A stretch of 64,000 bases of DNA from Antechinus flavipes (taxonomy: Eukaryota). The stretch is from the NCBI RefSeq assembly GCF_016432865.1, contig NC_067400.1:635066001-635130000 (forward strand), in the 5' to 3' direction. Position 1 is the stretch's first letter; each line of letters opens with the position of its first letter. The notes under the pieces were generated by a model. The model was given only the letters and a program-made list of their open reading frames with translations. It was not told the origin of the DNA and ran no database searches. Made by a program: the position numbers and the translations under genes. Shown one piece after another: positions 3,560 through 57,754 of the stretch.

Positions 3560-4010
3560 TACAATGGAGGGGTCTGGGAGAGGTCTCTTGAAGAAGATGA
3601 GATCTGAAGCAAGTCTTGAAGGAAAAAAGAAATCCAAGAGTTGGAAGAAAAGAGATAAAGCATTCCAGACATAGAGGATAGCCAGGGCAAAGGTATGAAG
3701 GTGAAAGGTGGAGAGTCATATTAGGACAGCAAGAAGGTGCACCTACAGAGAGAAAGAACATGTGTGAAAACTGAAAAGGTTGGAAGGAAGCTTTAAATTC
3801 TAAGCAGGAGAGGTAGCCCTCTGAACTCGGTGGGCAAGAAGTAGACATGATAAGATCACTCATGGCTTGATGAAAAATGGACTGAAGCAGGGAGAAAATC
3901 GAGGTAGGGTGGGGGCCAATAGCTCTTTCAATAAGCTAGGTGTCAGGTGATCATAGCAAGCACCAGAATAGGGTCTGTGTCAGAGGAGAAAAGGGGAAGC
4001 ACTGAAGAGA
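3560..4010 (-). mobile_element. L2 fragment
   Basis: Purine-rich L2-antisense text ending in gtcagaggagaaaagggg, which leads into the 27-bp array. Confidence 0.65.
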
Positions 4011-4305
4011 TGCTGCAAAGGTGACATAGACCAGAAGCTGCAGAGGTGAAATGGACCAGAGGTGCTGCAGAGGTGAAATGGACCAGAGATGCTGCATAGA
4101 TGAAATGGACCAGAGGTGCTGCAGAGGTGAAATGGACCAGAGATGCTGCATAGATGAAATGGACCAGAGATGCTGCATAGATGAAATGGACCAGAGATGC
4201 TGCATAGATGAAATGGACCAGAGATGCTGCAGAGATGACATGGACCAGAGATAGAGCAGAAGTGAAATGGACCAGAGATGCTGCACAGATGAAATGGACC
4301 AGAGC
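4008..4305. repeat. 27-bp tandem array (gaaatggaccagagatgctgcagaggt), L2-derived, about 11 units
   Basis: Direct reading; explains the MDQRCC and GPFHLCSIS repeat ORFs. Confidence 0.9.
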
Positions 4306-5326: not shown

Positions 5327-5397
5327 GGCAGCTAGGAGGCACAGTGGATAAGAGCATCAGCCCTGAAGTCACAAGGCCAGAAGTCAAATCTGGCCTC
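5327..5397 (+). mobile_element. tRNA-derived CORE-SINE 5' end (WSINE1/Mar-like), cut by N gap
   Basis: ggcagctaggaggcacagtggataagagc...gaagtcaaatctggcctc with A- and B-box-like elements. Confidence 0.8.
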
Positions 5398-23899: not shown

Positions 23900-25230
23900 A
23901 CCAGCCCTGAGACCAAGAGGCCATACCCAGAACCTGGAGCCCCCCTTGTGACAAGGAACGAAAAGGCAGAGGCCCCGGGGACTGCGGGCTGGAAAGGAGA
24001 TGGCCGAGCCAAGCGAGTGCCGAAGTGCTCCCCGAGCACGATCCCAGAGGGGGGTGCCCGCGGCCCCGGCCCGCCCCGGCCCCCGGAGGGCGGTGCAGGA
24101 GGAGGCGAGCATCAGGGGCTTCAGGCGGGGATGAGGGCTCGTGGTCTAGCGCAGGGGAAGGAGCTCCTCACACTTGGCGCAGGGCGCGCAGAAACCTTCC
24201 CCGTTGTAGAACGTGGGCAGCTCTCGAGCAAATCGTCCCCGGATCGGCCCCAGAGTGTTCACGCTGACCGAGAAAGGCCGGAGAGCCCCCTCCCCGCCTC
24301 CTCCCTCTGCGAACACGAGAAGGTCCTCCGGGGTCCTGGGTGGGGAAGGCCTTTGCCCGGGCCCATCTCCTGCTCTACATCAGAACGTGCACAGGAGCAA
24401 AACCCGTGAGTGTGGGAGGGGCTTCACCGGCATCAGACACATCATCCTTGTGATCGCTGTGGAAAAACCTTGGGCCAGCGCCAGAGAATCCCCCGCAGGG
24501 AAGCCCACGAGGGCACCGACTGTGGGGGAGCTTCTGCCAGGGCCACCCCCGACTCAGCACCAGAGAATTCACCGTGAAAGAGACCTTATGTATGTGGTGA
24601 TGGTGGGAAATGCTTCAGACTGAGCTCATTCCTTAATGGACACAGGAGTGAGAAGCCCTGTGGTTGTGCTGAGTGTGGGAAGGCCTTCAGGGTGAGCTCA
24701 GGCCTCGATGAACATGAGAATTCACACCGGAGAGACCCTGTCAGCATGAGGGACGTGGGAGGGCCTGTACCGGAGCGCCCCCTCGCTCAGCCTCGGGGGG
24801 GTCCGTGATGGGGGGAGACCCTGTCAGCGCGACAGATGTGGGAGGGCCTGTACCAGAGCGCCCCCTCGCTCAGCCTCGGGGGTCCATGATGGGGGGAGAC
24901 CCTGTCAGCATGAGGGACGTGGGAGGGCCTGTACCGGAGCGCCCCCTCGCTCAGCCTCGGGGGTCCGTGATGGGGGGAGACCCTGTCAGCGCGACGGATG
25001 TGGGAGGGCCTGTATCCGGAGCGCCCTCTCACTCAGCCTCGGGGGGTCCGTGATGGGGGAGACCCTGTCAGCGCGACGGATGTGGGAGGGCCTGTACCCG
25101 GAGCGCCCCCTCGCTCAGCCTCGGGGGGTCTGTGATGGGGGAGACCCTGTCAGTGTGATAAAAGCCTTGAGGGCACTCGCTTCCCTGAGGGAACCTCAGA
25201 GGGTCCCCACTGGAAAGAAGCCCTTGAGGG
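23900..25230 (+). pseudogene. Decayed C2H2 ZNF terminal exon
   Basis: gtctttcag acceptor, TSPETK spacer-like start, broken fingers (HQRIHR, EKPCGCAECGKAF, HTGE) with frameshifts. Confidence 0.75.
24730..25150. repeat. 81-83-bp minisatellite derived from one zinc-finger unit, 5 copies
   Basis: gagaccctgtcag anchor at 24732, 24815, 24896, 24977, 25059 and 25141. Confidence 0.9.
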
Positions 25231-28200
25231 TTACCCCTTCCCCGGAGGACGGGCCTTCATCCACGAGAGAGAACTCGCCCACTAGAGGCTGACTGGTCAG
25301 AGCCTTTGTCCGGCCCCGTCGCCTGGCCCGGCCCCAGAGGAAGCGCACTGATGCGGCCCCTGGGATGTTCCCTGACTCTGTAGCAGCCGGAAAGGAGTGG
25401 ACGGTGGGGCCGTAGCTGCTGAAATCCTTGGTTCTTAAAGGGGATGCCTGGAAAAGCAGAAGTCCGAGTTCCCCTCTCCAGAATCCCGGGAGAGGCGGAG
25501 GGCTTGGGCAGCCCCGGATGGGTCACAGAAGCCTGGGCCCCGTTCGGGGCCAAAGCTGGGGCTGGAGGGCGGGTCCCGTGGGGGATACAGGAATGGCCCT
25601 TGTTTCCCTCTGCCCCAGAGGTCTTCTTCCGACCTTCCTGGCCCCCCTCCCACGCTCAGGAGAGGGCGGATGTCCAGAAAGGAAGGTGGGGGTCAGGACA
25701 CTGGCAGCTGTAAAAAGGCTGGGGAGAAGGAATGGGAAGCAGGGCGGGGGGCACTTCTCTGCTGAAATGATGAAAATGAGCTGGGAGGGACGGGGAGCGG
25801 GCGCTGGGAGCAGTGTCACATTTTACAGATAAGGAAAGTGAGACCCAGGAGGCAACGCTGGGTAGGGTCCTTTCCACCGTTAACTGGCACCGAGCCTCAC
25901 ACTTCCCAGGTGCCCCAAAAGGGTGGGTGGGCATGGGGGTCTGGGCCAGGGGAGACCCCACGCATGCAGGGCTTGTGGACGATACCTGTGGACCAGGTGG
26001 GCAGGTACGTGGCTCACAGCCTCTGGATCTCTTGTGAAACATTGGACTAAGCGGCTGTCCGGAGCCTCCAAGGTTGCCCGCTGGCTTCCGGGCCTCCGAG
26101 GAAGCCTCCATGCTCTGAGCGGCTCCTCCGTCCCGGTGACCCTGAGGCCTGGGCTGAGGGGACCCTCTCCTCAGGTGTTGGGCGTGAATGTTAGAGCAAA
26201 CTTCCGTACCAAGAAGGAGGGGAGCTTCCTGGTGGGCTCTGCCCATGGCATGCCTTCTGGGTGGCAGAAGGGCTTTTTTTTGTGGGGGGGCAGTTGGAAT
26301 TTGGTGACTTGTCCAGGGTCACGCAGCTAGAAAGTGTTAAGTATCTCAGGCCATGTTTGAACTTGAGTCGTCCTAAATCCAGAGTCGATGCTCTATCCAC
26401 TGTGCCGTCTAGCTGCCCCACCAAGGGCTTTCTTGACTCAATTAACAGGATTATCTTAGGTGGGGGAAGGCTCAGAGGTTCCCATATAGCTACCAAATGG
26501 CAGAGTCAGGGCCCCGCAGGGCACGAGCCCCCGAGGCGGGCAGGAAAAGCGATCCAGGGACCCTCTGGAGGGCTCTCTGAAGCACCCGAGAACCCACTGT
26601 ATGACAGGGGACCGCCCGGTGTGGCGAGCCCCCCTCAGAGAAGGGGCTGCAGCTGTGCCAGAGGAGGCGTGAGAAGCCCCCGGAGTTCGTGGGGACTCGT
26701 GTCTGTGACGGAGCATCCGGAGCGCATTGGTCTGATCGGCCACGCCGCCACCGGACGCCGTCACAGATGTCATTTTGGTCCTCTTCAAGAACAAAGGGCA
26801 ACAACCAGCCAGAGGGGTGGTGGGGAGCCCCGGGGGCGTCCCAGGGAACCCTGGCAAAAAGGAGGAGCTGAGTGAGTCGTTCTTGCCTTGACTTACTCTT
26901 CTGAAATGACCTGTAAGAGGATTCTGGTTCTGAACCTTACAGACTGAGCTCTGGCAGACCTTTACCCTTCTCTGGGACCCAGCTCCCTTCCCTGGTGAAA
27001 TCAGCCAAGCAGTTGATCACAGACACTTATCAGGCACTCACAGGGTGCCAGCCACTGTCTGATACACAAGGGATGCACTGACCAAAAGGGGCCAAAGTCT
27101 CTGCCCTCGGGGAGCACTCGGGGCGTCTGAGAGGGGCAAAGCATGTGCTCTGGGAACTTGTTTTTGGTGGGGCCTCCAGTGCCTGCCCTTCCTGGACTCG
27201 AACCCCACTCATTGACCAGTGACTGGTTACTGACTTATCCGCGGCCCCAATGGGTGGGACTGGTCCAGTGTCCTGAGGGTGTCTCCAGCCAGAGCCTAAA
27301 GCATTTTTTAAAGAGTGTTTTATTTTCCCAAATCCATGCAGAGATAGTTTTCAATACTTACCTTCGCAAAACTTTGTGTTCCAAATTTTTCTCCCCACCC
27401 CCCAAGATCTCGGGCAATCAGGTAGAGGCTAGACACGTGCAATTCTGAGCATTTCCATACTTGTCATGCTGCACAAGAAAAATCAGATGAAAAGGGGGGA
27501 AATAGGCAGACAAAAAGTGAAAATGCTCTGCTTTTGGGGGACGTTCAGGCCCCATAGTTCTCCCTCTAGATGCAGGTGGCACTTTCCCAAGTCTTTTGAA
27601 ATTGCTTTGAATCAAACTGTTGAAAAGAGCCAAGTCCAGCACAGTTGAGTGATCATCGAATCTGATTGTTACTGTGTACAATGTTCTCTTGGTTCCACTC
27701 ACTTCATTCAGCATCAGGTCATGTAAGTCTTCCCAGGCTTTTGTGAAATCAGACTGCTCATTTTAACTAAAAAAAGAAAGGAAAACGATACAAAATGGAA
27801 CATAAAACATTGTCATGTGCCCAGCAGAATATCAGTGAGGATTCAAAATACATAAATTATTGGGTTCAAGAAAGGATATAAGAAATTATTTTCATGAATG
27901 TCCATCTTATAAGTTCTTTTGTTCTCTGCTGAGCACTTTTTCTGTTTTTTATTCCTTTCAACCCCATCCCCACTTCCTCTATGCAGGCTTATAGTTAAGG
28001 AGATGTATCTATTAAAATATGTATACACACATACACACCCTTTCCCCACACATTTTTGCTATTCCCGCTAACTCTGCTTTAATTCTCCTTCACTTGCTAT
28101 TTAACTTTGTCCCCATCCATGGATCCCTCTCTTCTCCATCTTCTGTCCATCCTTCCCTATTTATAGATTTTGGAGGCCATATATGTATATATGTAGTGGT

Positions 28201-29545: not shown

Positions 29546-29665
29546 TGGATAGAGCATTAGCTCTGAAAAGTCAGGAAGACCTGAGTTCAAATCTGGTCTC
29601 AGACACAAAACTTCCTGTGTGACTCTGGGCAAGTCTTAACCCCAAATGCCTCAGCAAAAAAAATT
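29546..29665 (+). mobile_element. CORE-SINE (WSINE1-like)
   Basis: ggatagagcattagctctgaaaagtcaggaagacctgagttcaaatc...gcctcagcaaaaaaa. Confidence 0.85.
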
Positions 29666-30779: not shown

Positions 30780-31420
30780 AAACAATCATTAGTCAAAACA
30801 TTAAACATTATGTGCCAATCACTGTGCTAAATGCTGGGGATACAAAAAAGGGGCAAAAGTTTGTCCCTGCCATCTGGGAGTCCAAAGTCTGAAGGAGAAG
30901 GGCCTGCAAATAGTTACAACCAAGTGATTTACAGAATAATAGGAAGTCATTAACACAAGAAAAGCCCTGGAAGACTTTCTGTAAAAACTGGGAGTTTAAT
31001 TGGGACTTGGAAGTCAGGGAGATCAGTTGAGTGGAGGAGAGAAAGCATTCCAGGCATAGGGCACTGAATGGAGAACACAGCCTGGAGGCTGTCATGCTTA
31101 AAAAGTATAGTCTGACAGTGAGGTGTAAAATTCTCCTGGATCGTTAAGAGCTTTTAATGCCAAACAGAGCATTACCTATTTACTCCTAGAAACTATAGGG
31201 ATCCACTTGTTTGTTGAGTGAGGGTGGAGAATGACGTCAGATCTGTGCTTTAGGAAAATCACTTTAGTGGCAGAATGAGGAATGGTCTGGAGAGAGACCC
31301 ATTCCCCAAGACCATCCCCTATTGCCATCCACTAGCATCACATTACATAGCTGTGAGTGATAAGATCCTGCAGCAAGAAAGTGACAGTGTCAGAGGAGAG
31401 AAGGGGATAAAAAAATTGCT
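30780..31420 (-). mobile_element. L2 3' portion
   Basis: tgtgccaatcactgtgctaaatgctggggatacaaa is the antisense L2 3' end; continues to gtcagaggagagaagggg. Confidence 0.7.
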
Positions 31421-32475
31421 GCAGAGGTGACATGGACAAGAGAAGGTACAGAGATGAAATGGAGCAGAGATACTGCAGAAGTGACATGGACTAGAGATTG
31501 TGAGGTGGTGAAATGGACCAGAGATGTTGCAGAGGTGACATGAACCAGAGACGCTGCACAAGTGAAATGGACCAGAGAAGCTACAGATGTGACATGGACC
31601 AGAGATGCTACAGAGGTGAAACAGACCAGAGAGGAAGCATAGGTGATATGGATTGGAGATGGTGCAGAGGTGAAATAGGCCACAGATGCTGAAGTGACAT
31701 GGACCAGAGATGGTACAAAGGTGACATGGCCCAGAGATGCTGCAGAGTTAAAAGGAACCAGATTTAGTGCAGAGTTGAAAGGGACCAGAGAAGCTGCAGA
31801 GGTGAAATGGATCAGAAATGGTGCAGGAGTGACATGGACCAGAGATTGTGTGGAGGTGAAATGGACTAGAGATGCTGCAGAAGTGAAATCAACCAGAGAA
31901 ACTGCAGAGGTGAAATGGATCAGTGATAGTGCAGAGGTGAAATGGACTAGAGATGCTGCAGAGGTGAAATGGACCAGAGATGGTGCAATGTGACGAATGC
32001 GCTAGCACCCAGGACACCCCAGAATCAGCCAGAGTCAGAATAAGCAAAAGTCCCTAGTCTTTATTCTTGGTCTTTAGACACAGGATTGAACAGGAAAGAA
32101 GTGGAATCTCCGCGACTGCCTTCTCCCTCATATACTGCCAAAGTATGACTGGCCAGTCTTACTCCACCCCCTAGTCCCTCCTACAATCCTCTGTATACAC
32201 CAATCATTGAGCCAGCACAGGATAGTGGGAAGGACCATTTTCCAAGCATATGCCCATAAAGTATTGTCCAATCAGTGCCCATAAAGTGTTGTCCAATCAG
32301 TAGTTAGCCTCAAGTGCTCAGCAGTCCTGACCTCAGTGCATCAACTCAATAGTTTCAGCCCTCTATAGTGCTGAGGTGAAATGGACCAGAAATGGTACAA
32401 AGGTGACATGGCCCAGAGATGCTGCAGAGTTTAAGCGACCAGAGAAGCTGCAGAGGTGAAATGGATCAGAGATGC
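31420..32475. repeat. 27-bp L2-derived array (31420-31988 and 32368-32475) split by an LTR
   Basis: Same unit as at 4.0 kb and 18.5 kb; resumes directly after the LTR. Confidence 0.9.
31989..32367 (-). mobile_element. Solo LTR, same family as 60486-60854
   Basis: Shares gacctcagtgcatcaactca, tagcctcaagtg and aatcagcc(a/g)gagtcag with the 60.5-kb element; minus-strand AATAAAGAC. Confidence 0.85.
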
Positions 32476-34059
32476 TGCAGAAGTGAAATCAACCGACCTT
32501 GACAGCTTATTGAATCTGGGGAATGAGAGTAATGAGATGTAGCTCCGATGGAGGACATAGCAATACCTGCTACCGTACCTTGAGAGTGCCACAAACAATG
32601 CTGACTGTCAGATAACAATCTGTTGGTCAGTGATAATCAAAATTTCTGAGAATTCAATAGTGGGGTGCAACACTTCTAAGCCCTAGAATTCTATATTTTT
32701 CAAGACCACTCTATACAAGATAACTATAAATATGTATAGGTATATTGGATTTAACATATTTTAACATTTTTAACATGTAATAGACTACCTGTCATCTAGT
32801 GGAGGGGGTGGGAGGAAGGAGGAGATAAGTAAGGGACCCTTTGCAAGGGTTAGTGTTGAAAAATAACTTATGCATATGTTTTCTAAATAAAAACCTTTAA
32901 AAAAATTACTAGTTGCTAGTACTAAATATAAAAATAATTGATCCTAGCTACCTGGTATACAATTTATTGTCAATAACCACTGCCACAGGTCATCTAGGAA
33001 GCTTGCCATGTTTCTCAAGTGGACATTTAATGCCTTTTTAAGGGCAACTAATAAAATCTAATCCATTTATTAAAAAAAAAAAAAAAAAAAAAAACACTCT
33101 GCAATTTTACCTCTAAGCTATAAAATTAGCCTATCAGTAACTTGAAGAATTAAAGTCCAATGCCCCTATGAGACACTAAAGCCCAATGATGGGGGAGAAC
33201 TGACCAAGTTACCAAGGTGATCTCCATCTGGGGTCACAAGGGAAACAGCTGGGGAAGGCAACTCCACCCATCAGTGACCTAAGCAGAAAAGCTGAGGTTG
33301 GGGAACCCTACAGGCAGAGACTGGCCTGTCCCGGAGGCCAGGGAGGGAGCCATTGGTGTACCCTTCTCTTTCTTTCTGCCTGTAGCCTGGGCAAGTTCCT
33401 CTTGTGCCACATTGAACCCCTGCTATCAGCTTGAAAGGGAGGAGGGGAAACAACACTGCCACCCACCTCCTTGCTAGGAGCCCCAACAGGTAAGCTTGAC
33501 TGCCTCTCCCTGGGCCTCCCCACACAAACACCTCCTTGCCATCTCCTCCACAAGGTGCTTTAGAAAGGGGGGGTCTCCCAGGGAGAGGGATTCCAGCAGG
33601 ACTGGAAGGATCTGAAGGGGAGAGGTGCCACACGAGGGCAGGGCTAGGAGCATGGGGAGGGGGAGTCTGGAGGGCAGTCACCACTGAATGCTAGCCCACT
33701 GGGTGAAGGGCCAGCCCCTTCTTCGGAAGGGAACCCTCTCTGCAAGGGAACCCTTCTCTGCCCTCCCCTCTTTCCAGGACAGCAAGTCATGAACTCCATC
33801 ATGGCCCATGGAGTCACCAGGACATGACCAGGCTGGCCCTGGGCAGAGGAGCCCAGCTAAGGGCATCGGAGGTCTCAGCCAGGAGCATCTAGTAGGAAAG
33901 ACCCTCCCCCCAAGGACCTGAGGATGGGCTAAGTGGGGGCCAGGGACTGCCCCATAACCTGGGCAGCAAGAGGGAGGACTCCAGCAGGTTTGTAGGCAGA
34001 AAAAAGGAAGCTGGAAGAGAGGGAGGGATTGGGAAGGGCGGGACGGGGGTCCCTCCAGG

Positions 34060-38669: not shown

Positions 38670-38812
38670 GGGCAGCTGATGGCACAGTGGATAGAGCACC
38701 AGCTCTGAAGTCAGGAGGACCAGAGTTCAAATCTAACCTCAGACACAACAATTCCTACCTGTGTGACCCTGGGCAAGTCACTTAACCCTAATCACCTCAG
38801 GAAAAAAAAAAA
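38670..38812 (+). mobile_element. Full-length tRNA-derived CORE-SINE (WSINE1-like) with A tail
   Basis: ggcagctgatggcacagtggatagagcacc...gagttcaaatc...ctgtgtgaccctgggcaagtcacttaacc...aaaa. Confidence 0.9.
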
Positions 38813-38921
38813 AGAATTTATATGTATAACCAGAAAAAAAGAGAAGTGGGGCTCCTGGTGTGACTAGTCTGGGAAAGGGAAAGGGCTAGCCTGGATCTCA
38901 GAGACGGTGATATCCCTCCAA

Positions 38922-39881
38922 CTATTCTCTAGTGTGAAGTTTGTGATGCTGGATCAGGTCCGAGCTATAGCGAAAGGCTTTCCCACACTGGTGACAGCCA
39001 TAGGGCTTCTCCCCGGTGTGAACCCTCCGGTGCTGAGTCAGGTGCGATCTCTGCACGAAGGCTTTGCCGCAGGCGCTGCACTGGAAGGGCTTCTCCCCGG
39101 TGTGAGTCCTCTGGTGCTCGATGAGGTAGGAGCTCACGCTGAAGGCTTTGCCGCAGACGCCGCACTGGTAGAGCTTCTCGCCGGTGTGAGTCCTCCGGTG
39201 CTGAGTGAGGTGGGAGCTCTGGACGAACGCCTTCCCGCACTGGGGACACTGGTAGGGCTTCTCGCCGCTGTGACTCCTCCGGTGTGTGACGAGGGCCGTC
39301 TTCCACATGAAGGCTCTCCCGCACTCGGGGCACGCGTAGGGCTTCTCCCCGGTGTGGACCCTGCGGTGCTGGCTCAGGTCCGAGCTGCCCTTGAAGGCCT
39401 TCCCGCACTCGGGGCACTCGTAGGGCTTCTCCCCGGTGTGGACCTTGTGGTGCTCGATGAGGGACGAGCTGCGGCCGAAGGCGCGGCCGCAGCGGCCGCA
39501 CGGGTAGGGCCTCTCCCCGCTGTGGCTCCTCTGGTGCTTGCGGAGGTCCGAGCTCCACCGGAAGGCCTTCCCGCACTCGGGACACGCGTAGGGCTTCTCT
39601 CCCGTGTGCACCCTCCGGTGCAGGCTCAGAGCTGAGTTTTGCAGGAAGGTTTTCCCGCATTCGCCACACTCGTGGGGCTTGTCTCGGGCTGCCGCGGGGG
39701 GACTCCGCCCAGTCCCCGGGGCACCCCGTTCCAGAGAGCGACCTTCCTCCCCCTGGGGGCTTTTCCGGGGCCACGCCACAGCCTCGGGGGGCGCCCCTTC
39801 CCCGCGCTTCCCCAGCGGGTCCCCTCCACGAGCTTCAGCAAACCCGGGGCCCAGGGGCCAGCTCCCCTCTAGTGTCTCCAT
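38922..39881 (-). CDS. C2H2 zinc-finger protein, 9 intact tandem fingers (319-aa ORF in a terminal exon starting at 39939)
   Basis: Nine CxxC...HxxxH fingers with TGEKP-type linkers and no stops; ctctttcag acceptor at 39940; ATG in GTAATGG context. Confidence 0.93.
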
Positions 39882-43365: not shown

Positions 43366-44387
<1,022 letters not shown>

Positions 44388-44870
44388 CTGAAAGACATAA
44401 AAACCGCACATGTTCCCTGGCTGGTAGTAGTGAAGGAAAAGCACATGGCAATGCGGGCAGGCGTCCCACACAGTGGCAGCAGAGGTGGCCCCGACGGGAG
44501 AGAGAGCCCAAGGAGGGCAGCTGGGAGAGCCACTGACCGGGCACTGAACAGAGAAACAAGAGGAAGGCGCAGCAGAGGGGAGGCTGGCCATGGCCCAGCC
44601 CTGGCCCTTCCTCTACCTCATCCTCCTGTCCCGGGTGGGGTCACCATGTCCCCACTCTCCCCCCACCACTGAAGGACAAAACCCACAGTTCTTCTGGTTT
44701 CTGTTGATATTGTCAGATTTAGCACAGTGCCCTGCACACAGCACGCTGACTTCCCTAATTCCAGCATCTCGGGCAGGGACCACAAGGTCTGTTAGGAACT
44801 ACTGTGGACCAGCTAACGCCCTCGCTCTAAGGCTCCAGCATCTGGTGTTAGCCAGTATTAACTAGAGGAA

Positions 44871-45830
44871 TACCACTAGGGGGCAGCCCTAGTGCTGAGC
44901 ATGATTAACTCTATGGGGACACCACTAGGGAGCAGCCCTGGTGCTGAGCATGATTAACTCTATGGAGACACCACTAGGGGGCAGCCCTGGTGCTGGGCAG
45001 CATTAACTCTATGGGGACACCACTAGGGGGCAGCCCTAGTGCTGAGCATGATTAACTCTATGGAGACACCACTAGGGGGCAGCCCTGGTGCTGGGCAGCA
45101 TTAACTCCAGAGGGACACCACTAGGGGGCAGCCCTGGTGCTGGGCAGCATTAACTCTATGGAGACACCACTAGGGGGCAGCCCTAGTGCTGAGCATGATT
45201 AACTCTATGGGGACACCACTAGGGGGCAGCCCTAGTGCTGAGCATGATTAACTCTATGGAGACACCACTAGGGGGCAGCCCTGGTGCTGGGCAGCATTAA
45301 CTCCAGAGGGACACCACTAGGGGGCAGCCCTGGTGCTGGGCAGCATTAACTCCAGAGGGACACCACTAGGGGGCAGCCCTAGTGCTGAGCATGATTAACT
45401 CTATGGGGACACCACTAGGGGGCAGCCCTAGTGCTGAGCATGATTAACTCTATGGGGACACCACTAGGGGGCAGCCCTGGTGCTGGGCAGCATTAACTCC
45501 AGAGGGACACCACTAGGGGGCAGCCCTGGTGCTGGGCGGCATTAACTCCAGAGCGACACCACTAGGGGGCAGCCCTGGTGCTGGGCGGCATTAACTCCAG
45601 AGGGACACCACTAGGGGGCAGCCCTGGTGCTGGGCGGCATTAACTCCAGAGGGACACCACTAGGGGGCAGCCCTGGTGCTGGGCAGCATTAACTCTATGG
45701 GGACACCACTAGGGGGCAGCCCTAGTGCTGAGCATGATTAACTCTATGGAGACACCACTAGGGGGCAGCCCTGGTGCTGGGCAGCATTAACTCCAGAGCG
45801 ACACCACTAGGGGGCAGCCCTGGTGCTGGG
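44871..45830 (+). repeat. 49-bp minisatellite, 20 units, each with a CTCF core motif
   Basis: ccactagg every 49 bp from 44873 to 45804; 19 units read CCACTAGGGGGCAG and one reads CCACTAGGGAGCAG. Confidence 0.95.
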
Positions 45831-48555
45831 CATTGATAACTCCAGGAGGACACCGGGGCCGACCCAATCTTGGGAGGCACCAGGGTTACTCTTAAAGACC
45901 CACATCCCTTAGCTGGAACCTGTGCCCACTACTCCAGTCCCCTGGAGGAAGGTGGCAGGGCAGCCTCACCTGCCACGGGTCCAAAGCTGCCCCATCTCCC
46001 TGGGTTGGGTCCGAGGGCCCACAGCTATCCCTCCTCTCCCAGTCCGGGCCCAAAGGGAGCTCCGTAGGAGGCATGTGTCCCGAGGGTCTCAGGGCCCGGA
46101 AAGTCTCTACCAGTGGCCCCTGCTGGGGAATCTGGGGGTCCTAACAGCGGGGGCAGAGGGACGTGGGAGCGCCCTGCCCCCGTGGTTGGGGGGGCCAAGC
46201 TTGGGCAGCTGGTGAAAGCCTTCGGAGGCACCAGGGCGGAGCCGGTCTTTCCTCCCCACGAGGTCCTTCCCGGGATCCTTTGCGGAACTTGGGGCCAGCC
46301 TCTGCCTTGGCCCACCAGGTGCGATCAGCAGCCGCGGCGCTGGGGTGCCAGGCCCGGTCCGGGCAGCCGCCAGTGATCTTTGAGGCACCTCATGCTGCTG
46401 TCGGGGAGGCCCGAGTTCAAACTGAGCCCTGAGTAAGACCCCGAGCCCTGCCTCTGTTTCCCCAAGTGTAAAACGGAGGGCATAACAGCCCTTCACCAGG
46501 ACCAGAGGAGGTGGCTGTAGAGCCTTAACTCGGCCAGGTCCTAGTCCACAGGAGGCGCTAATTTCTTACCTCAAAGGACTTTGAGTAGGTGGGAAACCCG
46601 GGGTGCTCAGGCTGCCAACATTATGCACCTACTGCGTCCCTCCTCCAAGCCCATCCCAAGCTACCGGCAGGCCACTCCCCTGGGCCCCCAAACCCTCTCC
46701 AGATGGCTCCATTCAGTTCAGTCCTGGGTCCTGGCCGGGCTCTTCCGGTCCCTACCGGTTTCCCAGCCCCTTCTCTGGCACTCCCTCCCAGCCGTGTCCC
46801 ACGTGGTCACACCCCCCAGCAAAGGCACTGGAGGCTCCCAGAACCCTCGGTCCAACCTCCTCCAGGCTCCAGGGCACTTTCCCGAGGCCCCCCAGGAGGG
46901 CCCCCAGGGGGCAGGCGGGGCAGGCGGGAAGCGGGCAGATACCCCAGTTCCTGCCCCCCTCCCCCCCAGCGGAGGCAATCCTCCCGGAAACGAGTTCCCT
47001 CGCGCTAGGAGCAGGGCTATGCAGCGCCCCCTCCCCTCCCCTCCCTCCCGCAGGCTCCTCAAGGGCTTCCAGTGAGTGCTGCCCCCCCACGGGAACGGCT
47101 TTTAACCCCCTAGGCCCTCGCTGTCTGGGCAGAGCTGTCTGCCCCCCACCTCCCCCAGGCGGGTAGTTGCAAGTACCGGGTCAGCCCCCTGACTGACAGG
47201 CTGGGCCACCGCCCAGCCCCCACACCCTACACCCCGCCCCCACCCAGTCCCCATGCCCTACACCCCGCCCCCACCCAGCCCCCACGCCCTGCACCACGCC
47301 CCCACGCCCTGTACCCCGCCCCTACCGGCCCCCACGCCACAGGCCCCCAGCACACCACGGGGGCTGAATGAACGCTTGTGGATTGTGATCCGCCCTGGGA
47401 AGGGCCCCTCCAGCCCGGAGCCCTCAGGAGACTGAAGACACAGACAGAGCCCAAGGATTATGGAGAGAAGAGGAGGACAGGCGGGGAGGAGGGGATTCTG
47501 AACTGGGAGGAGCGATCAGAACGGCAATAAGCATTTAGGAAGCACCGGCTGTATGCCCCATTCAAACATGCTCTCCACCCGGTCAATGCCGGTGTGATTC
47601 TCGTTTTACAGAAAAGGAAACAGAGGCAAGCAGCATTTCAGGGGGTGAGGAGAGCCGGCTCGTTGCCAGGGAGGCCACCAAGGCCTCCCTCGGGCTGGAG
47701 TCTCCAGGGAAGGGCCCTCCCCAGGCCCCCAAAAGGTCTTCAAAGACTCTCAGAACATCGGGCCAAAGACAAGAAGGAAATACGCTGTTAGGCCAGCAAG
47801 TCGAAGAGAATCTGGGGGTCTGAGTGCTTGCCACCGGCTCAGGGGGCAGGGGGTGGGGGAGGAGGCCTGGCACCCAGGCCTAAAGACAACGAGGGAGCTT
47901 GAGAGCCGAGATCTGAACCCCCAGGGGAGAAAAGAGCTCCCCTAGTCTCCCCGAACTGGAGGAAGAAGCTTTGGGGGGGAGGGGGGAAGGGAGGACTTCA
48001 GCTCCCTTTTTGGCTTGGAGTCCAGGCTTTGGGGACCTCCTACAGTCCACAAGCAGGGGCTCCCCTGGGCCCAGAAGCCCTGAGTTCAAATCCGGAGTCA
48101 GAGGCGTGCTAGGTGTGTGACTGCCTCATCTGTAAAATGGGGATCAAAATCTCCCCTCCATCCCAGAGACGCGGGGGGATCGGATTTAAGCCGTCAGCAC
48201 GGGGCTTGGCACATAGTAGGAGCTTCGTAACGGCAAGTTGCCTTCCTTTCTTCTGCCTCTCTGCAGGGAATGGCGCCGGGCAGTCCCGGCCTTCCAGGCG
48301 CTCCGGGCTAACCAGGAGTTAAGAGAAGCAGAACAAGCATCTATGCAGCCCCTGCTGTGTGCGGGCGCCGGCTTTGGGGGGACCAAAGGCTCAGAGGAGG
48401 GGTTAGCGTCTGGGGAAGGAGATGGGGAGGGGGCTATAGACACCCGGCACCCCGTTTCTCAGCAGACGGGGGACGGGACGCTAGGAAGGTGGCCCCCAAA
48501 CCCTCATTTTCAACCTCCCACGCCCATCCGCCCTACGGTGCAGGGCAGGACTCAC

Positions 48556-49277: not shown

Positions 49278-49680
49278 GAGGACGAGGTTGGCACATGGTG
49301 CCCTCGGAAGGCCCTTCCTCCTGCGCCTTCTCTGGGGAGGACGAGGTTGGCACAAGGTGCCCTCGGAAGGCCCTTCCTCCTGCGCCTTCTCTGGGGAGGA
49401 GGTTGGCACACGGTGCCCTCGGAAGGCCCTCCCTCCTGTGCCTTCTCTGGGGAGGAGGTTGGCACACGGTACCCTCGGAAGGCCCTTCCTCCTGCGCCTT
49501 CTCTGGGGAGGAGGTTGGCACACAGTGCCCTCGGAAGGCCCTTCCTCCTGCGCCTTCTCTGGGGAGGAGGTTGGCACACGGTGCCCTCGGAAGGCCCTCC
49601 CTCCTGCGCCTTCTCTGGTGAGGACAAGGTTGGCACATGGTGCCCTCGGAAGGCCCTCCCTCCTGCGCCTTCTCTGGGGC
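49278..49680. repeat. 56/59-bp minisatellite, 7 units
   Basis: (g/a)aggttggcac anchor at 49284, 49343, 49399, 49455, 49511, 49567 and 49626. Confidence 0.92.
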
Positions 49681-50918: not shown

Positions 50919-51284
50919 TCACTCACTGTGGGGGCTCGGGGGGCCGAGGGGGACCATGTGGTGCTCCCAGTGCTCCAGGGAGTATCTGCACACTTTGCAC
51001 GCGGGCTCCCGGTCCTGGCAGCAGAAGAGCGAGAAGGGCTCCATGTGCAGGGGGCAGTGGTCCCGGGGAAGCTCGCTGGGCTGCTGGGGCTGCAGGCGCA
51101 GCAGCAGGGACCGCACTCTGTCCAGGCGCAGGCTGGTCCGCAGCTCCCCGGGGGCCTCCCCGGGGAAGCAGGCCCGGCACCAGGTGCGGCCGCAGGGGCT
51201 CGTGACCGGGTCCTGGAACAAGTTCCTGCAGACCGGACACAAGAGCTCCTTCTCCAAGGCCCGGATCACCAGGTCAGTGTCCAT
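50919..51284 (-). CDS. Truncated TRIM-like protein: degenerate RING plus B-box2 (121 aa); may be a pseudogene
   Basis: tttcccacag acceptor (exon starts 51288), ACCATGG Kozak; ELLCPVC...PCGRTWCRAC and CPLH...FCCQDREPACKVCRYSLEHWEHHMVPL. Confidence 0.75.
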   Translation of the reverse strand: MDTDLVIRALEKELLCPVCRNLFQDPVTSPCGRTWCRACFPGEAPGELRTSLRLDRVRSLLLRLQPQQPSELPRDHCPLHMEPFSLFCCQDREPACKVCRYSLEHWEHHMVPLGPPSPHSE

Positions 51285-51924
51285 GGTCCTGTGGGAAATG
51301 AGGAGACTGGGTAGGGCTTGTCGGCCCGCCTGGCCCGCCACACTGGCGAACGGGGCCCCGGAGGGGAGGGGGAAGGGGAGTTCTGGGAGAGGAGCCGGCC
51401 GGCTCGGACCAGACCGGCTGAGGTCAGAGCAAGGAGCCCCAGTTAGGGCACTGGGGCAGACCCAAGACAGCCAGACTCCAGCCCTCCCCGGGGCAAGGGG
51501 ACACACACCACTGGTAGGAAGTCCTCCCTAAGTGGCCACTTTGCAACTCGCCTCCAGGGCACTGGCTCAGCCCCCCACAGATAACTCTCTCCCGGGAAGA
51601 GGGTCCCCAGCCACGACCGACCTGTCGCTGACTTGACTACTCCCCTCTCCACAACTCTAACCCTAACCCTGACACCTTTGCACGGCTCACTCGAATCCAA
51701 TTCACGTGAAACAGGAAGAGTGGTTAGAAGGCGCTAAGTGCGAGTGGGGAGCTATGGGAATACAGGTGAGGTGCTGTTGTGAAGGTAGAAGGAAGGGCCC
51801 AACTTGGCAGTAGAATAGAAGGGAAGAGTCAAGGACACTGGTGTTATTCCACGTTTGAGCCCAGGGATGGATGGGCAGAAGGAACGAGGGTTAGACAGAA
51901 AGATGGAAGGAAGGGCCCAATTGC

Positions 51925-54490
51925 ATGGATGGATGGAAGGGTGGATGGATTGAAGCATAGACAGACGGTTGAATGAAGGGATCAGTGGAAGGATGGAGGA
52001 AAGGATGGATGGATAGATGGAAGAAAGGATGGTTGAATGATGATCAGTGGAAGGATGGAGGGAAAGATGGATGGATAGATGGAGAAAAGGATGGTTGGAT
52101 AGATGGAGGAAAGAATGGATGGATAGATGGAAGGATGGAAGAAAGGATGGGTAGATAGATGGAGGAAAGAATGGATGGATAAATGGAAGGATGGAGGAAA
52201 GGATGGTTGGATAGATGAAGAAAAGGATGGTTGGATAGATGGTTGAATGAATGGATCAGTGGAAGGATGGAGGAAAGGATGGATGGATAGATGGAGGAAA
52301 GGATGGTTGGATAGATGGTTAAATGAATGGATCAGTGGAAGGATGGAGGAAAGGATAGATGGCTAGAAGGATGGAAGAAAGGATGGGTGGACTGAAGGAT
52401 GGACAAATGGTTGAATGAATGATCAGTGGAAGGATGGAGGAAAAGATGGATGGATAGATGAAGGATGGAAGAAAGGATGGGTGGATAGATGGAGGAAAAA
52501 ATGGATGGATAGATGAAGGATGGAGGAAAGGATGGATGGATAGATGGAAGGATGGAAGAAAGAATGGGTAGATAGATGGAGGAAAGAATGGATGGATAAA
52601 TGGAAGGATGGAGGAAAGGATGGTTGGATAGATGAAGAAAAGGATGGTTGGATAGATGGTTGAATGAATGGATCAGTGGAAGGATGGAGGAAAGGATGGA
52701 TGGATAGATGGAGGAAAGGATGGTTGGATAGATGGTTGAATGAATGGATCAGTGGAAGGATGGAGGAAAGGATGGATAGATGGAGGAAAGGATGGTTGGA
52801 TAGATGGTTGAATGAATGGATTAGTGGAAGGATGGAGGAAAGGATGGATGGCTAGAAGGATGGAAGAAAGGATGGGTGGACTAAAGGATGGACAAATGGT
52901 TGAATGAATGATCAGTGGAAGGATGGAGGAAAAGATGGATGGATAGATGAAGGATGGAAGAAAGGATGGGTGGATAGATGGAGGAAAAAATGGATGGACA
53001 GATGAAGGATGGAGGAAAGGATGGATGGATAGATGGAAGGATGGAGGAAAGGATGGATGGATAGATGGAAGGATGGAGTAAAGGATGGATGGATAGATGA
53101 AGGATGGAAGAAAGGATGGGTGGATAGATGGAGGAAAAAATGAATGGATAGATGAAGGATGGAGTAAAGGATGGATGGATAGATGGAAGGATGGAGGAAA
53201 GGATGGATGGATAGATGGAAGGATAGAGGAAAGGATGGATGGATAGATGGAAGGATGGAAGAAAGGATGGGTGGACTGAAGGATGGACAGACGGTTGAAT
53301 GATCAGTGGAAGGATGGAGGAAAAGATGGATGGATAGATGAAGGATGGAAGAAAAGATGGGTGGATAGATGGAGGAAAAAATGGATGGATAGATGAAGGA
53401 TGGAGGAAAGGATGGATGGATAGATGGAAGGATGGAGGAAAGGATGGATGGATAGATGGAAGGATGGAGTAAAGGATGGATGGATAGATGAAGGATGGAA
53501 GAAAGGATGGGTGGATAGATGGAGGAAAAAATGGATGGATAGATGAAGGATGGAGTAAAGGATGGATGGATAGATGGAAGGATGGAGGAAAGGATGGATG
53601 GATAGATGGAAGGATAGAGGAAAGGATGGATAGATGGAAGGATGGAAGAAAGGATGGGTGGACTGAAGGATGGACAGACGGTTGAGTGATCAGTGGAAGG
53701 ATGGAGGAAAAGATGGATGGATAGATGAAGGATGGAAGAAAAGATGGGTGGATAGATGGAGGAAAAAATGGATGGATAGATGAAGGATGGAGGAAAGGAT
53801 GGATGGATAGATGGAAGGATGGAGGAAAGGATGGATGGATAGATGGAAGGATGGAGTAAAGGATGGATGGATAGATGAAGGATGGAAGAAAGGATGGGTG
53901 GATAGATGGAGAAAAAATGGATGGATAGATGAAGGATGGAGTAAAAGATGGATGGATAGATGGAAGGATGGAGGAAAGGATGGATGGATAGATGGAAGGA
54001 TAGAGGAAAGGATGGATGGATAGATGGAAGGATGGAAGAAAGGATGGGTGGACTGAAGGATGGGCAGACAGTTGAATGAATGATCAGTGGAAGGATGGAG
54101 GAAAAGATGGATGGATAGATGAAGAATGGAAGAAAGGATGGGTGGATAGATGAAGAAAAAAATGGATGGATAGATGAAGGATGGAGGAAAGGATGGATGG
54201 ATAGATGGAAAGATGGAGAAAAGGATGGTTGGATAGATGAAGAAAAGGATGGTTGGATAGATGGTTGAATGAATGGATCAGTGGAAGGATGGAGGAAAGG
54301 ATGGATGGATAGATGGAAGGATGGAGGAAAGGATGGATGGATAGATGGAAAGATGGAGAAAAGGATGGTTGGATAGATGAAGAAAAGGATGGTTGGAGAG
54401 ATGGTTGAATGAATGGATCAGTGGAAGGATGGAGGAAAGGATGGATGGATAGAAGGATGATCAATGAATTGATAAATGGATGGATGGAGG
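51925..54490. repeat. About 2.5-kb (GGAT/GGAA/AGAT)-rich low-complexity satellite
   Basis: Direct reading; recurring landmarks such as gatcagtggaaggatggagg. Confidence 0.95.
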
Positions 54491-55719: not shown

Positions 55720-56100
55720 ACCTCCCGGGAGCTGGGAACTCGCAGCCCCCTGCCCCAGCCCCAAGGGCTCTGCGGGGGAGGGGCGGGGGCGAGGGGGGCG
55801 GGCGAGGGGGGCCGACCTCCCGGGAGCTGGGAACTCGCAGCCCCCTGCCCCAGCCCCAAGGGCTCTGCGGGGGAGGGGGGGGGCGAGGGGGGCCGACCTC
55901 CCGGAGCTGGGAACTCGCAGCCCCCTGCCCCAGCCCCAAGGGCTCTGCGGGGGAGGGGCGGGCGAGGGGGGCCGACCTCCCGGGAGCTGGGAACTCGCAG
56001 CCCCCTGCCCCAGCCCCAAGGGCTCTGCGGGGGAGGGGCGGGGGCGAGGGGGGCCGACCTCCCGGGAGCTGGGAACTCGCAGCCCCCTGCCCCAGCCCCA
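55720..56100. repeat. About 80-bp CpG/GC-box-rich minisatellite, about 5 units
   Basis: cctccc(g)ggagctgggaactcgcagccccctgccccagcccc anchor at about 55722, 55817, 55897, 55977 and 56058. Confidence 0.92.
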
Positions 56101-57182
56101 GAAGCCTCGGGCCCCTCACACCCCCTCTCGCTGCTCTGGGGAAGGGGCGGTCCCCGACGCTGACGTGGAGGGAAGCCTGGAGAACACCTGGAGGAGCCAG
56201 GACTGCCCAAGCAGCTTCTCTGCCCTAGCTGCTGCCAGGGGTGGAGGAGGGCTGCAGGGAGGGCCGCACAGAGCCCCGGGCCCTTCGGCGAGCCCCTCCT
56301 CCCTTGAGCTCAAACTCCCTTCAGCCCGTCACTTGTGTCCGGAGCACGCTGGGTGACCCTGGCCAAGTCACTCCCCCTCTGCCCGCCTTGGCCCCCACTT
56401 CTGCTGCCTTCTCCGCAAAGACCATCCGGTCGCCATCCTCGGGTTCCGGCCCCGAACTCTGGGGCTGCTTTAAAAGCCCTCATGGCCACTTGGCGTTGGC
56501 GGCCCTGCTCCTTCGGCCCCGCCCAGAGAAGCGCCTCTTATTGGAAAGAACTTGTAAAAGCAGCAGAAAAAACTTCAGCAAAGGTCAATGATTGAAAGAA
56601 TCCGGTCTTCCACCTCTGCTAAGGGGGCGACTTCTGGGGGTCAGGCTCCTCCACAGTCGGGCTGTGCTGGCGGGTCTTGTCCAGCGAGGCAGAGGCCCCC
56701 GAACCGCGGGTCCGGGTTCTAATGCTCCCCAGGCCTAACGCTGACCTGGCCATTTTTATCCTGGAGGTACTAGGGAGCCAGAGTTCCTGTAGGAGGCTGA
56801 GCGGGCAGCCAAGGGTTCTGAGATCCAATGGGGGCGGTGGGGAGGGTCCACTTCAGGATCTGCTGCTGCCTTTTGCTGCTCCTGCATCCCAGATCAGGGG
56901 AGCCCCAAGGGCTGTAACCCGATCCTATTGTCACTCAGGTAGGAGATCTCCAGGCCAGGCTTGGCCTGGCCACGGCCGCCAGCTCGGCCTTGTCAGCCTC
57001 AGTCAGGGATGCCCGGAACAACCTGCCGAGATCCAGAGCGGACTCAGTGGGGCTCCTGGCTCTCTGGCCTCCCCCCCCTCCCTCTCCCCAGCAGGCGCCC
57101 GGAACAACCTGCCGAGATCCAGAGTGCGCGCCTCCCCCGCCCCCCTTTCCCCACCCCCCTCCCCGCCTGCCGGGGCACCCAC

Positions 57183-57353
57183 CTGAGGCTCTGCAGCCGA
57201 CAGCCTGGCTGCAGCAGGCCCCGGCCCAGCAGCTTGGCGCCTTCCTCTCCCACGTGGCTGTCACTGAGGTCCAGCTGCCTCAGGCTGGGGCAGCTGCTCA
57301 GCACCAAGGCCAGCGTCTCACAGCCCAAACTGGTGAGCCCGCACATCTGGACC
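57183..57353 (-). CDS. RI-like LRR exon (NLRP/RNH1-type gene)
   Basis: 171 bp, phase 2-2, ag/gt; VQMCGLTSLGCETLALVLSSCPSLRQLDLSDSHVGEEGAKLLGRGLLQPGCRLQSL. Confidence 0.92.
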
Positions 57354-57754
57354 CTGCAGGGGGGAGAGACAGAGGGGGAGACGTGCAGGAGGGGGACAGC
57401 TGGGGGCCCGGACCGGAAGGGGCTCCCATTAGAAGGGGGTTGCTGGGGCCTGAAGGGACACTCTTGAACCCCAAGGTCTCTGCTATCTGCCCCAACCCTC
57501 GGAGCGTCTGCTCCTGCCCTGCCCTTCCCAGGGAAGCAGGCTCCTTTCCTTAGTGAAGCCGTCTCACCCTAGGAAGGATGTGGGACAGGACTGGAATGCC
57601 CAGCTTGGAGACTGGGAACCCCTGACCTCAGATCTCTTCCCAGCAAGGGGACATCCAGGAGCCAGTCACACTTCTGCATCTCAGAGTCCTATCAAATCCC
57701 CAAGATAACAGTATCTCTCCCCCTTCCATCATGTTGGTTGGAAGGGAAGGGGTG

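What the first reader, a model, noticed from the sequence alone, without database searches (positions are those of the whole stretch)
44871..45830. Tandem array of 20 co-oriented CTCF consensus sites: a candidate VNTR insulator
Seen: an exact 49-bp period with no indels; 19 of 20 units carry CCACTAGGGGGCAG, all on one strand, while the spacer varies (two main types). Known: the CTCF core consensus is CCACYAGRKGGCRS; motif orientation sets loop-extrusion barriers; CTCF-bearing repeats occur at human subtelomeres and macrosatellites such as DXZ4. This core has no CpG, so binding should resist methylation. Inference: a strong directional boundary near the ZNF/TRIM-NLR transition, possibly intronic to the ZNF transcript, with strength tuned by copy number.
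Basis: partly seen in the sequence, partly recalled or inferred. Interest (0 to 1): 0.85.

Follow-up and report, generated by a model that had tools for sequence, protein, structure and literature searches.

The report
Minisatellite of twenty co-oriented CTCF motifs
A real 49-bp tandem repeat in a marsupial (Antechinus flavipes) ZNF/TRIM-NLRP gene cluster carries a strong binding motif for the chromatin-loop protein CTCF in 19 of its 20 units, so it is a plausible but untested copy-number-variable chromatin boundary of a kind already known in mouse and human.

Summary
Window 44872-45851 is 20 head-to-tail units of exactly 49 bp with no indels. Nineteen units carry CCACTAGGGGGCAG on the + strand, and the motif occurs nowhere else in the window. 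Each site scores 18.3 of 25.8 bits on the CTCF matrix (p about 4e-7); the best site elsewhere scores 13.6. The 19 sites are one site copied, not 19 independent events, so a few such arrays per genome are expected by chance.

The genome is Antechinus flavipes, and the array lies 1.6 Mb from a chromosome end, where tandem arrays fill 15% of the window. It sits between a frameshifted ZNF pseudo-exon and a TRIM-like RING/B-box exon, both on the minus strand. No SINE, MIR or zinc-finger origin could be shown; degenerate edge units point to local birth.

Only 1 of 13 variable columns falls in the core, which is weak evidence of constraint. Related species hold the array, and one may hold about 8 times more of it.

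CTCF occupancy, insulation and intronic status could not be tested. Closest precedents are DXPas34 and Dxz4. I file it as a new member of a known kind. First readers noted at least five similar arrays elsewhere in this genome; those notes are unchecked.

The parts
44872..45851 (+). Homogenised core of the minisatellite: 20 units of 49 bp. Nineteen carry CCACTAGGGGGCAG and unit 2 carries a G-to-A variant scoring 12.2 bits. The last unit (45803-45851) has a diverged spacer.
44766..44871 (+). About two degenerate edge units on the left. The spacer part is still recognisable. The core is decayed (CGCTCTAAGGCTCCAG in unit -1; ACCACAAGGTCTG in unit -2).
   Evidence: alignments to the unit consensus; read
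45852..45900 (+). One degenerate edge unit on the right, without the core.
43366..44264 (-). Frameshifted C2H2 zinc-finger pseudo-exon, with finger fragments in at least two frames. It ends about 610 bp from the array.
   Evidence: zf-C2H2 and zf-H2C2_2 hits on three separate ORF pieces
38922..39881 (-). Intact terminal exon of a C2H2 ZNF gene with 9 fingers.
   Evidence: called as a gene in the public record
50919..51506 (-). TRIM-like exon: a B-box plus a RING that matches only the first half of the RING models. It is the nearest recognisable coding feature on the right, 5.1 kb from the array.
46111..46129 (-). The only moderately scoring CTCF-like site nearby (12.8 bits). It is in the opposite orientation, 260 bp to the right of the array.

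Best explanation
This is a locally born, GC-rich 49-bp minisatellite in a subtelomeric, minisatellite-dense ZNF/TRIM-NLRP cluster of the marsupial Antechinus flavipes. One strong CTCF M1 core was present in, or arose in, the founder unit. Unequal exchange and gene conversion then multiplied it to 19-20 copies in a single orientation.

Inferred mechanism: where chromatin is permissive, CTCF occupies many of the units. A 34-bp footprint in a 49-bp period leaves about 15 bp between neighbours, so neighbouring sites could be filled together and would keep nucleosomes off about 1 kb. The core has no CpG, so DNA methylation should not block binding directly.

All motifs are forward on the + strand. 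By the convergent rule, the array should stall cohesin arriving from higher coordinates, that is from the TRIM/NLRP side and the chromosome end. It would anchor loops or a stripe in that direction and be leakier to cohesin coming from the ZNF side. Many sites in series would lower permeability, so array length could set barrier strength.

Shown: the array, the motif strength, the orientation, the genomic context, and its presence in relatives. Inferred: binding, directionality and dosage effect.
For: - Array anatomy.
- Motif: 18.3 of a maximum 25.8 bits, p about 4e-7 at the window's GC content. The best score elsewhere in 64 kb is 13.6.
- CTCF motif and motif-word usage are conserved across mammals, including a marsupial with its own ChIP-seq (PMC3368268). 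The same paper places the DNase footprint on a 34-bp motif.
- Of 13 variable columns in the 49-bp unit, only 1 lies in the 14-bp core (hypergeometric P=0.05), or 1 in the 19-bp matrix span (P=0.007).
- The array sits at the same place in organism A and organism B (flanks about 98% alike), with array pieces at 4-10 times single-copy depth. In organism E (flanks about 95% alike) the same flank contigs are present, though they stop at 44789 and 45826, and array pieces are 85-93% alike, so the array is probably at the same locus there and is not a recent accident or an assembly artefact.
- Precedents: each 34-bp DXPas34 monomer holds a CTCF site (PMC3149622). Co-oriented Dxz4 sites act as an orientation-dependent barrier (PMC6985041). 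Tandem CTCF sites act as insulators (PMC7087399). Predicted CTCF sites scale with HRNR VNTR length.
Against: - No occupancy, accessibility or Hi-C data could be consulted.
- The 19 sites are one event. Given the number of minisatellites in a 3-Gb genome, a few arrays with a site this strong are expected by chance (arithmetic).
- The region is a ZNF cluster near a chromosome end. From general knowledge, such regions are often H3K9me3 heterochromatin that can mask CTCF motifs (PMC12487818, title and abstract only).
- The constraint signal is weak and post hoc. Many variable columns are linked.
- In organism E the array pieces are less conserved (85-93%) than the flanks (about 95%), as expected for an unconstrained minisatellite. 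Whether the core itself is kept there could not be seen.
- The array has CpG o/e 0.06, so it shows no sign of being a protected unmethylated island.
- No upstream M2 motif is present (judged by eye against a consensus recalled from memory).
Confidence: 0.5

Rival explanations
1. It is a neutral minisatellite. The founder unit happened to contain a CTCF-like word, G-rich minisatellite units being close in composition to the motif's 3' half. Slippage and unequal exchange copied it. In vivo the array is nucleosomal or heterochromatic and unbound, and has no architectural role.
For: - The window holds 24 tandem arrays covering 15% of its length and lies 1.6 Mb from the chromosome end. Minisatellite birth is therefore rampant here, and only this one array has the motif.
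- A few such arrays are expected by chance genome-wide.
- The mosaic of unit variants is typical of minisatellite turnover.
- Array pieces in organism E diverge faster than the flanks.
- CpG o/e is 0.06.
- Edge units have lost the core.
Against: - The motif is top-tier, not marginal.
- The core is the least variable part of the unit.
- First readers noted at least five other co-oriented CTCF-motif arrays in only about 40 Mb of this genome. If those motifs are equally strong, that is more than chance predicts. These notes are unchecked.
Confidence: 0.4
2. The array is bound mainly by another factor. One candidate is the germline paralogue CTCFL/BORIS, which shares the same DNA specificity. Another is a lineage-specific zinc-finger protein of the surrounding cluster that recognises the unit. 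The array would then serve germline or heterochromatin functions rather than somatic loop anchoring.
For: - BORIS has the same binding specificity and targets several repeat classes, including VNTR-bearing SVA elements (PMC5007689 and PMC5973138, titles and abstracts).
- The array lies inside a ZNF cluster.
Against: Nothing in the sequence points to it beyond the CTCF core. No second conserved block stands out in the spacer.
Confidence: 0.07
3. It is an assembly artefact: a collapsed, expanded or chimeric repeat in the long-read assembly.
For: Short-read contigs break at both edges of the array, at 44890 and 45803 in run X1. No single record spans it.
Against: - The contig-depth mass over the array divided by the flank depth gives about 23 units in X1 and about 22 in X3, close to the 20 assembled (my arithmetic).
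- The same flank-array junctions are present in another organism (B).
- X1 may be the individual that was assembled, so it is not independent support.
Confidence: 0.03

Closest known systems
DXPas34 minisatellite at the mouse Tsix/Xist locus
   Same: It is a minisatellite of short monomers (30-34 bp), each with a CTCF site. It evolves quickly, with a variable number of sites between related species, and is thought to have arisen by local amplification (PMC3149622).
   Different: DXPas34 is CpG-rich, X-linked, rodent-specific, and tied to Tsix transcription and X-inactivation choice. The array here is CpG-poor (o/e 0.06) and has a 49-bp unit with a canonical, high-scoring core. It lies in a ZNF/TRIM-NLRP cluster on a 637-Mb marsupial chromosome. 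There is no sequence relationship.
DXZ4/Dxz4, FIRRE and ICCE CTCF-binding macrosatellites
   Same: They are tandem arrays with co-oriented CTCF sites. Dxz4 acts as an orientation-dependent barrier to loop extrusion, and its copy number is polymorphic (PMC6985041; PMC6125249, PMC5899087 and PMC3218863).
   Different: Their units are kilobases long, they are X-linked, and CTCF binding is specific to the inactive X. Here 19 sites are packed into 1 kb, and there is no homology.
Human VNTRs proposed to add CTCF sites with length (HRNR exon-3 repeat; 1q23.3 tRNA VNTR)
   Same: [quoted passage not shown]
   Different: HRNR is a coding repeat with weaker matches (FIMO P<1e-4). The tRNA VNTR has 7.3-kb units. 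The array here is non-coding in all six frames and its motif is far stronger.
SINE-borne CTCF sites (opossum MAR_Mdo of the MIR family, rodent B2, dog SINEC)
   Same: This is a lineage-specific way of multiplying an M1-only CTCF motif in a marsupial genome (PMC3368268).
   Different: Those sites spread by retrotransposition to dispersed loci. Here the motif was multiplied in place by tandem duplication. The unit shows no significant similarity to the window's SINE copies or to a MIR consensus.
[quoted passage not shown]
   Same: Many directional sites in series act as graded, permeable insulators in multigene clusters (PMC7087399).
   Different: Those sites are kilobases apart, one per promoter or segment, and are not a tandem repeat.

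Membership tests
Vertebrate CTCF binding site (M1 core) | Stringent match to the 19-20 bp M1 matrix or consensus | tested here: met
   The exact IUPAC consensus CCASYAGRKGGCRS is met in 19 units. The score is 18.3 of 25.8 bits, p about 4e-7.
Vertebrate CTCF binding site (M1 core) | Occupancy by CTCF in vivo or binding in vitro | not testable with these tools
   No ChIP, CUT&RUN or footprint data for this species could be reached. The run search returned runs of unstated library type with coded names, which laid like whole-genome DNA.
Vertebrate CTCF binding site (M1 core) | Upstream M2 motif at fixed spacing (an optional feature of the 33/34-bp site) | tested here: not met
   The 25 nt upstream of each core (…GCATTAACTCTATGGGGACA) show no resemblance to the M2 consensus as I recall it. 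This was checked by eye only. M1-only sites are bound in opossum SINEs (PMC3368268).
Minisatellite / VNTR | Head-to-tail units of 10-100 bp with interspersed unit variants | tested here: met
   the period is 49 bp, there are 11 distinct unit sequences, and left and right half types are mixed in a mosaic.
Minisatellite / VNTR | Copy number varies between individuals | tested here: inconclusive
   Only one run of the same organism was laid, and it may be the assembled individual. Crude depth mass gives about 23 units (A), 22 (B), at most 26 (E), and 160 or more (C, flanks not found). The tool warns that summed contig depth is not a copy number.
CTCF-bound tandem-repeat boundary (Dxz4 type) | Every unit carries a CTCF site, and all sites share one polarity | tested here: met
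CTCF-bound tandem-repeat boundary (Dxz4 type) | Insulation or a one-sided stripe in Hi-C that depends on the array | not testable with these tools
   No contact data were available.
CTCF-bound tandem-repeat boundary (Dxz4 type) | Orthology or sequence relationship to DXZ4, FIRRE, ICCE or DXPas34 | not tested
Unit size (49 bp against kilobases or 34 bp) and genomic context make orthology implausible.
SINE-borne CTCF site | Motif embedded in a recognisable SINE copy | tested here: not met
Scores fell within the range of shuffled units, with one nominal P=0.007 among 16 tests.

The most novel reading that the evidence does not exclude
The array is one member of a genome-wide class. In this dasyurid genome, CTCF sites would be multiplied recurrently in place as co-oriented minisatellites. 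First readers noted at least six such arrays in about 40 Mb scanned, with 49-, 62- and 66-bp units. This would be a tandem-duplication route to CTCF-site clusters, distinct from the SINE route known in opossum, rodents and dog. Copy number would change fast between species (about 20 units here, possibly 160 or more in one relative), retuning boundaries in fast-evolving ZNF and innate-immunity clusters.
Probability: 0.12. Interest if true: 0.7.

Novelty: new member of a known kind. Interest (0 to 1): 0.4.

Why it matters
If CTCF binds the array, it would be a compact, methylation-indifferent, one-directional loop-extrusion barrier whose strength could change by simple repeat gain or loss. It sits at the junction of two fast-evolving gene families in a marsupial. 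That would give a natural allelic series for asking how the number of CTCF sites in series sets boundary permeability. It would also add tandem amplification to retrotransposition as a way genomes acquire CTCF clusters. If CTCF does not bind, the array is a useful negative case: a top-scoring motif repeated 19 times and still unused.

Tried and rejected
- SINE origin. A marsupial MIR-type SINE with a poly-A tail lies at 38670-38815 and has several relatives in the window. By eye there are tempting resemblances to the MIR core and to the SINE head, but they do not survive the controls.
- Zinc-finger origin. This was prompted by a first-reader note on a finger-derived minisatellite at 24730-25230 and by a shared 9-mer with the antisense finger linker. 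There is no significant similarity to the intact ZNF exon, the pseudo-exon or the 81-bp array.
- Higher-order repeat structure. Lag-4 (196 bp) similarity gave P=0.076 and lag-10 gave P=0.04, both uncorrected. I treat neither as real.
- Coding potential. There are 18-22 stops in each of the six frames, and the longest open stretch is 30 codons.
- Known RNA families. None reached threshold in the window.
- KRAB or other 5' ZNF exon between 39.9 and 50.9 kb, PRY/SPRY exon anywhere in the window. None was found by regular expressions, by tblastn with the window's own KRAB-A box, or by Pfam on ten ORFs.
- Metagenome scan for the unit. There were 0 hits.
- Scan findings by sequence.

Full report
**1. 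What is there**

The stretch 44872-45851 is a clean minisatellite. Tandem Repeats Finder reports period 49, 19.6 copies, 91% matches, no indels and score 1460. Cutting at 49-bp steps gives 20 in-register units. Nineteen hold the exact 14-mer CCACTAGGGGGCAG on the + strand. Unit 2 has a G-to-A change at the tenth base of the 14-mer (unit position 11).

The IUPAC CTCF consensus has 19 matches in the window, all inside the array and all on the + strand. The unit has no other copy in the 64 kb.

The array is non-coding, with 18-22 stops in every frame. It is G-skewed, 59% G+C and nearly free of CpG: 5 CpGs, o/e 0.06, against 0.35-0.39 in the flanks.

About two decayed units lie to the left (44766-44871) and one to the right (45852-45900). 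They keep parts of the spacer but not the core. This is the usual picture of a homogenised centre with old edges, and it argues for birth in place.

**2. How strong the motif is, and whether it exceeds chance**

Each site scores 18.3 bits of a possible 25.8. Unit 1 scores 18.7 and the unit-2 variant 12.2. The best score anywhere else in the window is 13.6. The exact score distribution gives p about 4e-7 per position at the window's base composition.

The figure of 19 observed against 0.08 expected only says that one site was copied. The effective number of events is one.

The window holds 24 tandem arrays covering 15% of its length. The chance that one of them offers a site this strong is about 8e-4. 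With tens of thousands of minisatellites in a 3-Gb genome, a few such arrays are expected by chance. So the motif's presence alone does not prove selection.

**3. Internal evidence on constraint**

Thirteen of the 49 columns vary among the 20 units. One of them lies in the 14-bp core (hypergeometric P=0.05), or one in the 19-bp matrix span (P=0.007). Counting cells, 1 minor-allele cell falls in the core against 72 outside. This fits a protected core, but it is post hoc and several variable columns are linked.

Unit variants form a mosaic of left-half and right-half types, as expected from unequal exchange and conversion. No higher-order period is significant.

**4. Where it is**

A look-up of the intact ZNF ORF returned GCA_016432865.2, record CM028219.1, 636.7 Mb long. 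A paper lists that assembly as Antechinus flavipes (PMC11965985). A MIR-type SINE with a poly-A tail at 38670-38815 fits a marsupial (the attribution rests on my own knowledge).

The array maps to about 635,110,872-635,111,851, which is 1.6 Mb from the end of the record. The window's + strand is the record's + strand.

Features on the minus strand, from right to left:
- LRR exons: LRR_6 at 57047-57568, a weak hit.
- A TRIM-like exon at 50919-51506, with a B-box and a half-matching RING.
- 5 kb of GC-rich sequence with no recognisable domain.
- The array itself.
- A frameshifted ZNF pseudo-exon at 43366-44264.
- An intact nine-finger ZNF exon at 38922-39881.

No KRAB, SCAN or SPRY exon was found between 39.9 and 50.9 kb. 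Whether the array is intronic therefore cannot be decided.

**5. Origin**

I tested three ideas and rejected each for want of significance:
- derivation from the marsupial SINE or the MIR core;
- derivation from the SINE head;
- derivation from the antisense of a zinc-finger linker.

The first matters because opossum CTCF sites were spread by MAR_Mdo SINEs of the MIR family (PMC3368268). Here the multiplication was tandem, not by retrotransposition.

**6. Relatives**

Contigs of four public runs were laid on 43600-47000 (organism names are coded).

- Run X1 (organism A, possibly the assembled animal) and run X3 (organism B, flanks about 98% alike) have flank contigs that stop 18-26 nt inside the first unit and restart in the last unit. 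Short array pieces lie at 4-10 times flank depth.
- Run X9 (organism E, flanks about 95% alike) has the same flank contigs, but its array pieces are only 85-93% alike.
- Dividing depth mass over the array by flank depth gives about 23, 22 and at most 26 units respectively. The first figure agrees with the 20 assembled units, which serves as an internal check. The tool itself warns that summed depth is not a copy number.
- Run X4 (organism C) holds many array pieces 95-99% alike at a summed mass at least 8 times higher, but none of either flank. Three other runs of organism C, one of only 203 million letters, held the same share of sampled words as X4 (0.32-0.34), a little more than the array's 28% share of the stretch. 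This suggests a high copy number there.

I cannot explain the missing flanks in organism C. Possible causes are expansion, a different locus or a filter. Whether the core is kept in organism E could not be seen.

**7. Likely mechanism**

By established knowledge, a forward CTCF motif stalls cohesin that arrives from its 3' side. Forward sites therefore sit at the low-coordinate anchor of a loop, which is the convergent rule. Inversion of the co-oriented Dxz4 array swaps the direction of its contacts (PMC6985041; PMC5899087). Sites in series act as permeable insulators (PMC7087399).

Applied here, the array would hold cohesin coming from the TRIM/NLRP side and the distal 1.6 Mb, and would be leakier from the ZNF side.

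The DNase footprint of CTCF covers a 34-bp motif (PMC3368268). A 49-bp period therefore allows neighbouring sites to be filled together, and a filled array would exclude nucleosomes over about 1 kb.

The core has no CpG, so methylation should not block it directly. H3K9me3-type masking remains possible in a ZNF cluster (PMC12487818, abstract only).

I put CTCF occupancy in at least some tissue at about one half, and a measurable boundary role lower, at roughly 0.3.

**8. Comparison with what is known**

- The nearest precedent in form is DXPas34, a minisatellite whose 30-34-bp monomers each carry a CTCF site and whose site number varies among rodents (PMC3149622).
- The nearest in proposed function are the Dxz4/DXZ4, FIRRE and ICCE arrays.
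- The nearest in the 'length sets the number of sites' idea is the HRNR VNTR.
- A recent preprint also finds CTCF motifs concentrated in human rDNA and satellite arrays (bioRxiv 10.64898/2026.07.18.739380).

The kind is therefore known. This is a new, unusually clean and dense candidate in a marsupial, with no functional data.

**9. A lead beyond this locus**

First-reader notes of this scan list at least five other co-oriented CTCF-motif arrays in the roughly 40 Mb of this genome read so far:
- a 62-bp array in DHDH intron 3;
- a 66-bp array in UPB1 intron 3;
- five sites between ASPN and OMD;
- eleven sites beside SMC6/GEN1;
- one in a ZNF intron.

They are unchecked, and readers recognise this motif easily. 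If the motifs are as strong as here, the number exceeds my chance estimate. A whole-genome test with shuffled-unit controls would settle it.

**10. Verdict**

I rate it a new member of a known kind, of moderate interest.

Noticed in passing
window 1-64000: There are 24 separate tandem arrays with periods of 11-85 bp, covering 15% of the window. This fits a position 1.6 Mb from the end of a 637-Mb chromosome.
   Followed up: partly
window 4006-4304, 18503-18780, 31417-31987, 32369-32489: The same 27-bp unit (TGCTGCAGAGGTGAAATGGACCAGAGA and its rotations) forms arrays at four separate places. It is probably the internal repeat of a dispersed element.
   Followed up: no
window 43600-47000, run X4 (organism C): Array pieces 95-99% alike lie at a summed depth at least 8 times that of the other organisms. 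No contig covers either flank, although a contig matches up to 43648. Three further runs of organism C, one of only 203 million letters, held the same share of words as X4 (0.32-0.34). This is unexplained: it could be an expanded array, another locus or a filter.
   Followed up: partly
window 38670-38815: A young-looking MIR-type tRNA-derived SINE with a 14-nt poly-A tail lies just 3' of the intact ZNF exon. Diverged relatives lie at 29546-29663, 26274-26418, 5327-5397 and 16396-16457.
   Followed up: partly
window 50919-51506 (-): The RING of the TRIM-like exon matches only the first half of the RING models (CPVC...C.RTWCRAC, with no histidine). No coiled-coil or PRY/SPRY exon was found anywhere in the window. 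It may be a relic or part of a fusion, as another first-reader note suggests.
   Followed up: partly
window 51986-54457: A 2.4-kb purine-rich array (GGAT/GGAA-type, period 32, about 76 copies) starts about 480 bp beyond the 5' end of the TRIM-like exon.
   Followed up: no
window 49280-49679 and 55787-56100: Two further well-kept minisatellites lie in the GC-rich interval around the TRIM-like exon: 56 bp x 7 at 93% matches, and 80 bp x 3.9 at 96% matches. Neither has a CTCF-like site above 8 bits.
   Followed up: partly
window 44715-44760: A weak MIR 3'-region-like fragment lies about 110 bp left of the array. It is in the wrong order to be the source of the unit.
   Followed up: partly
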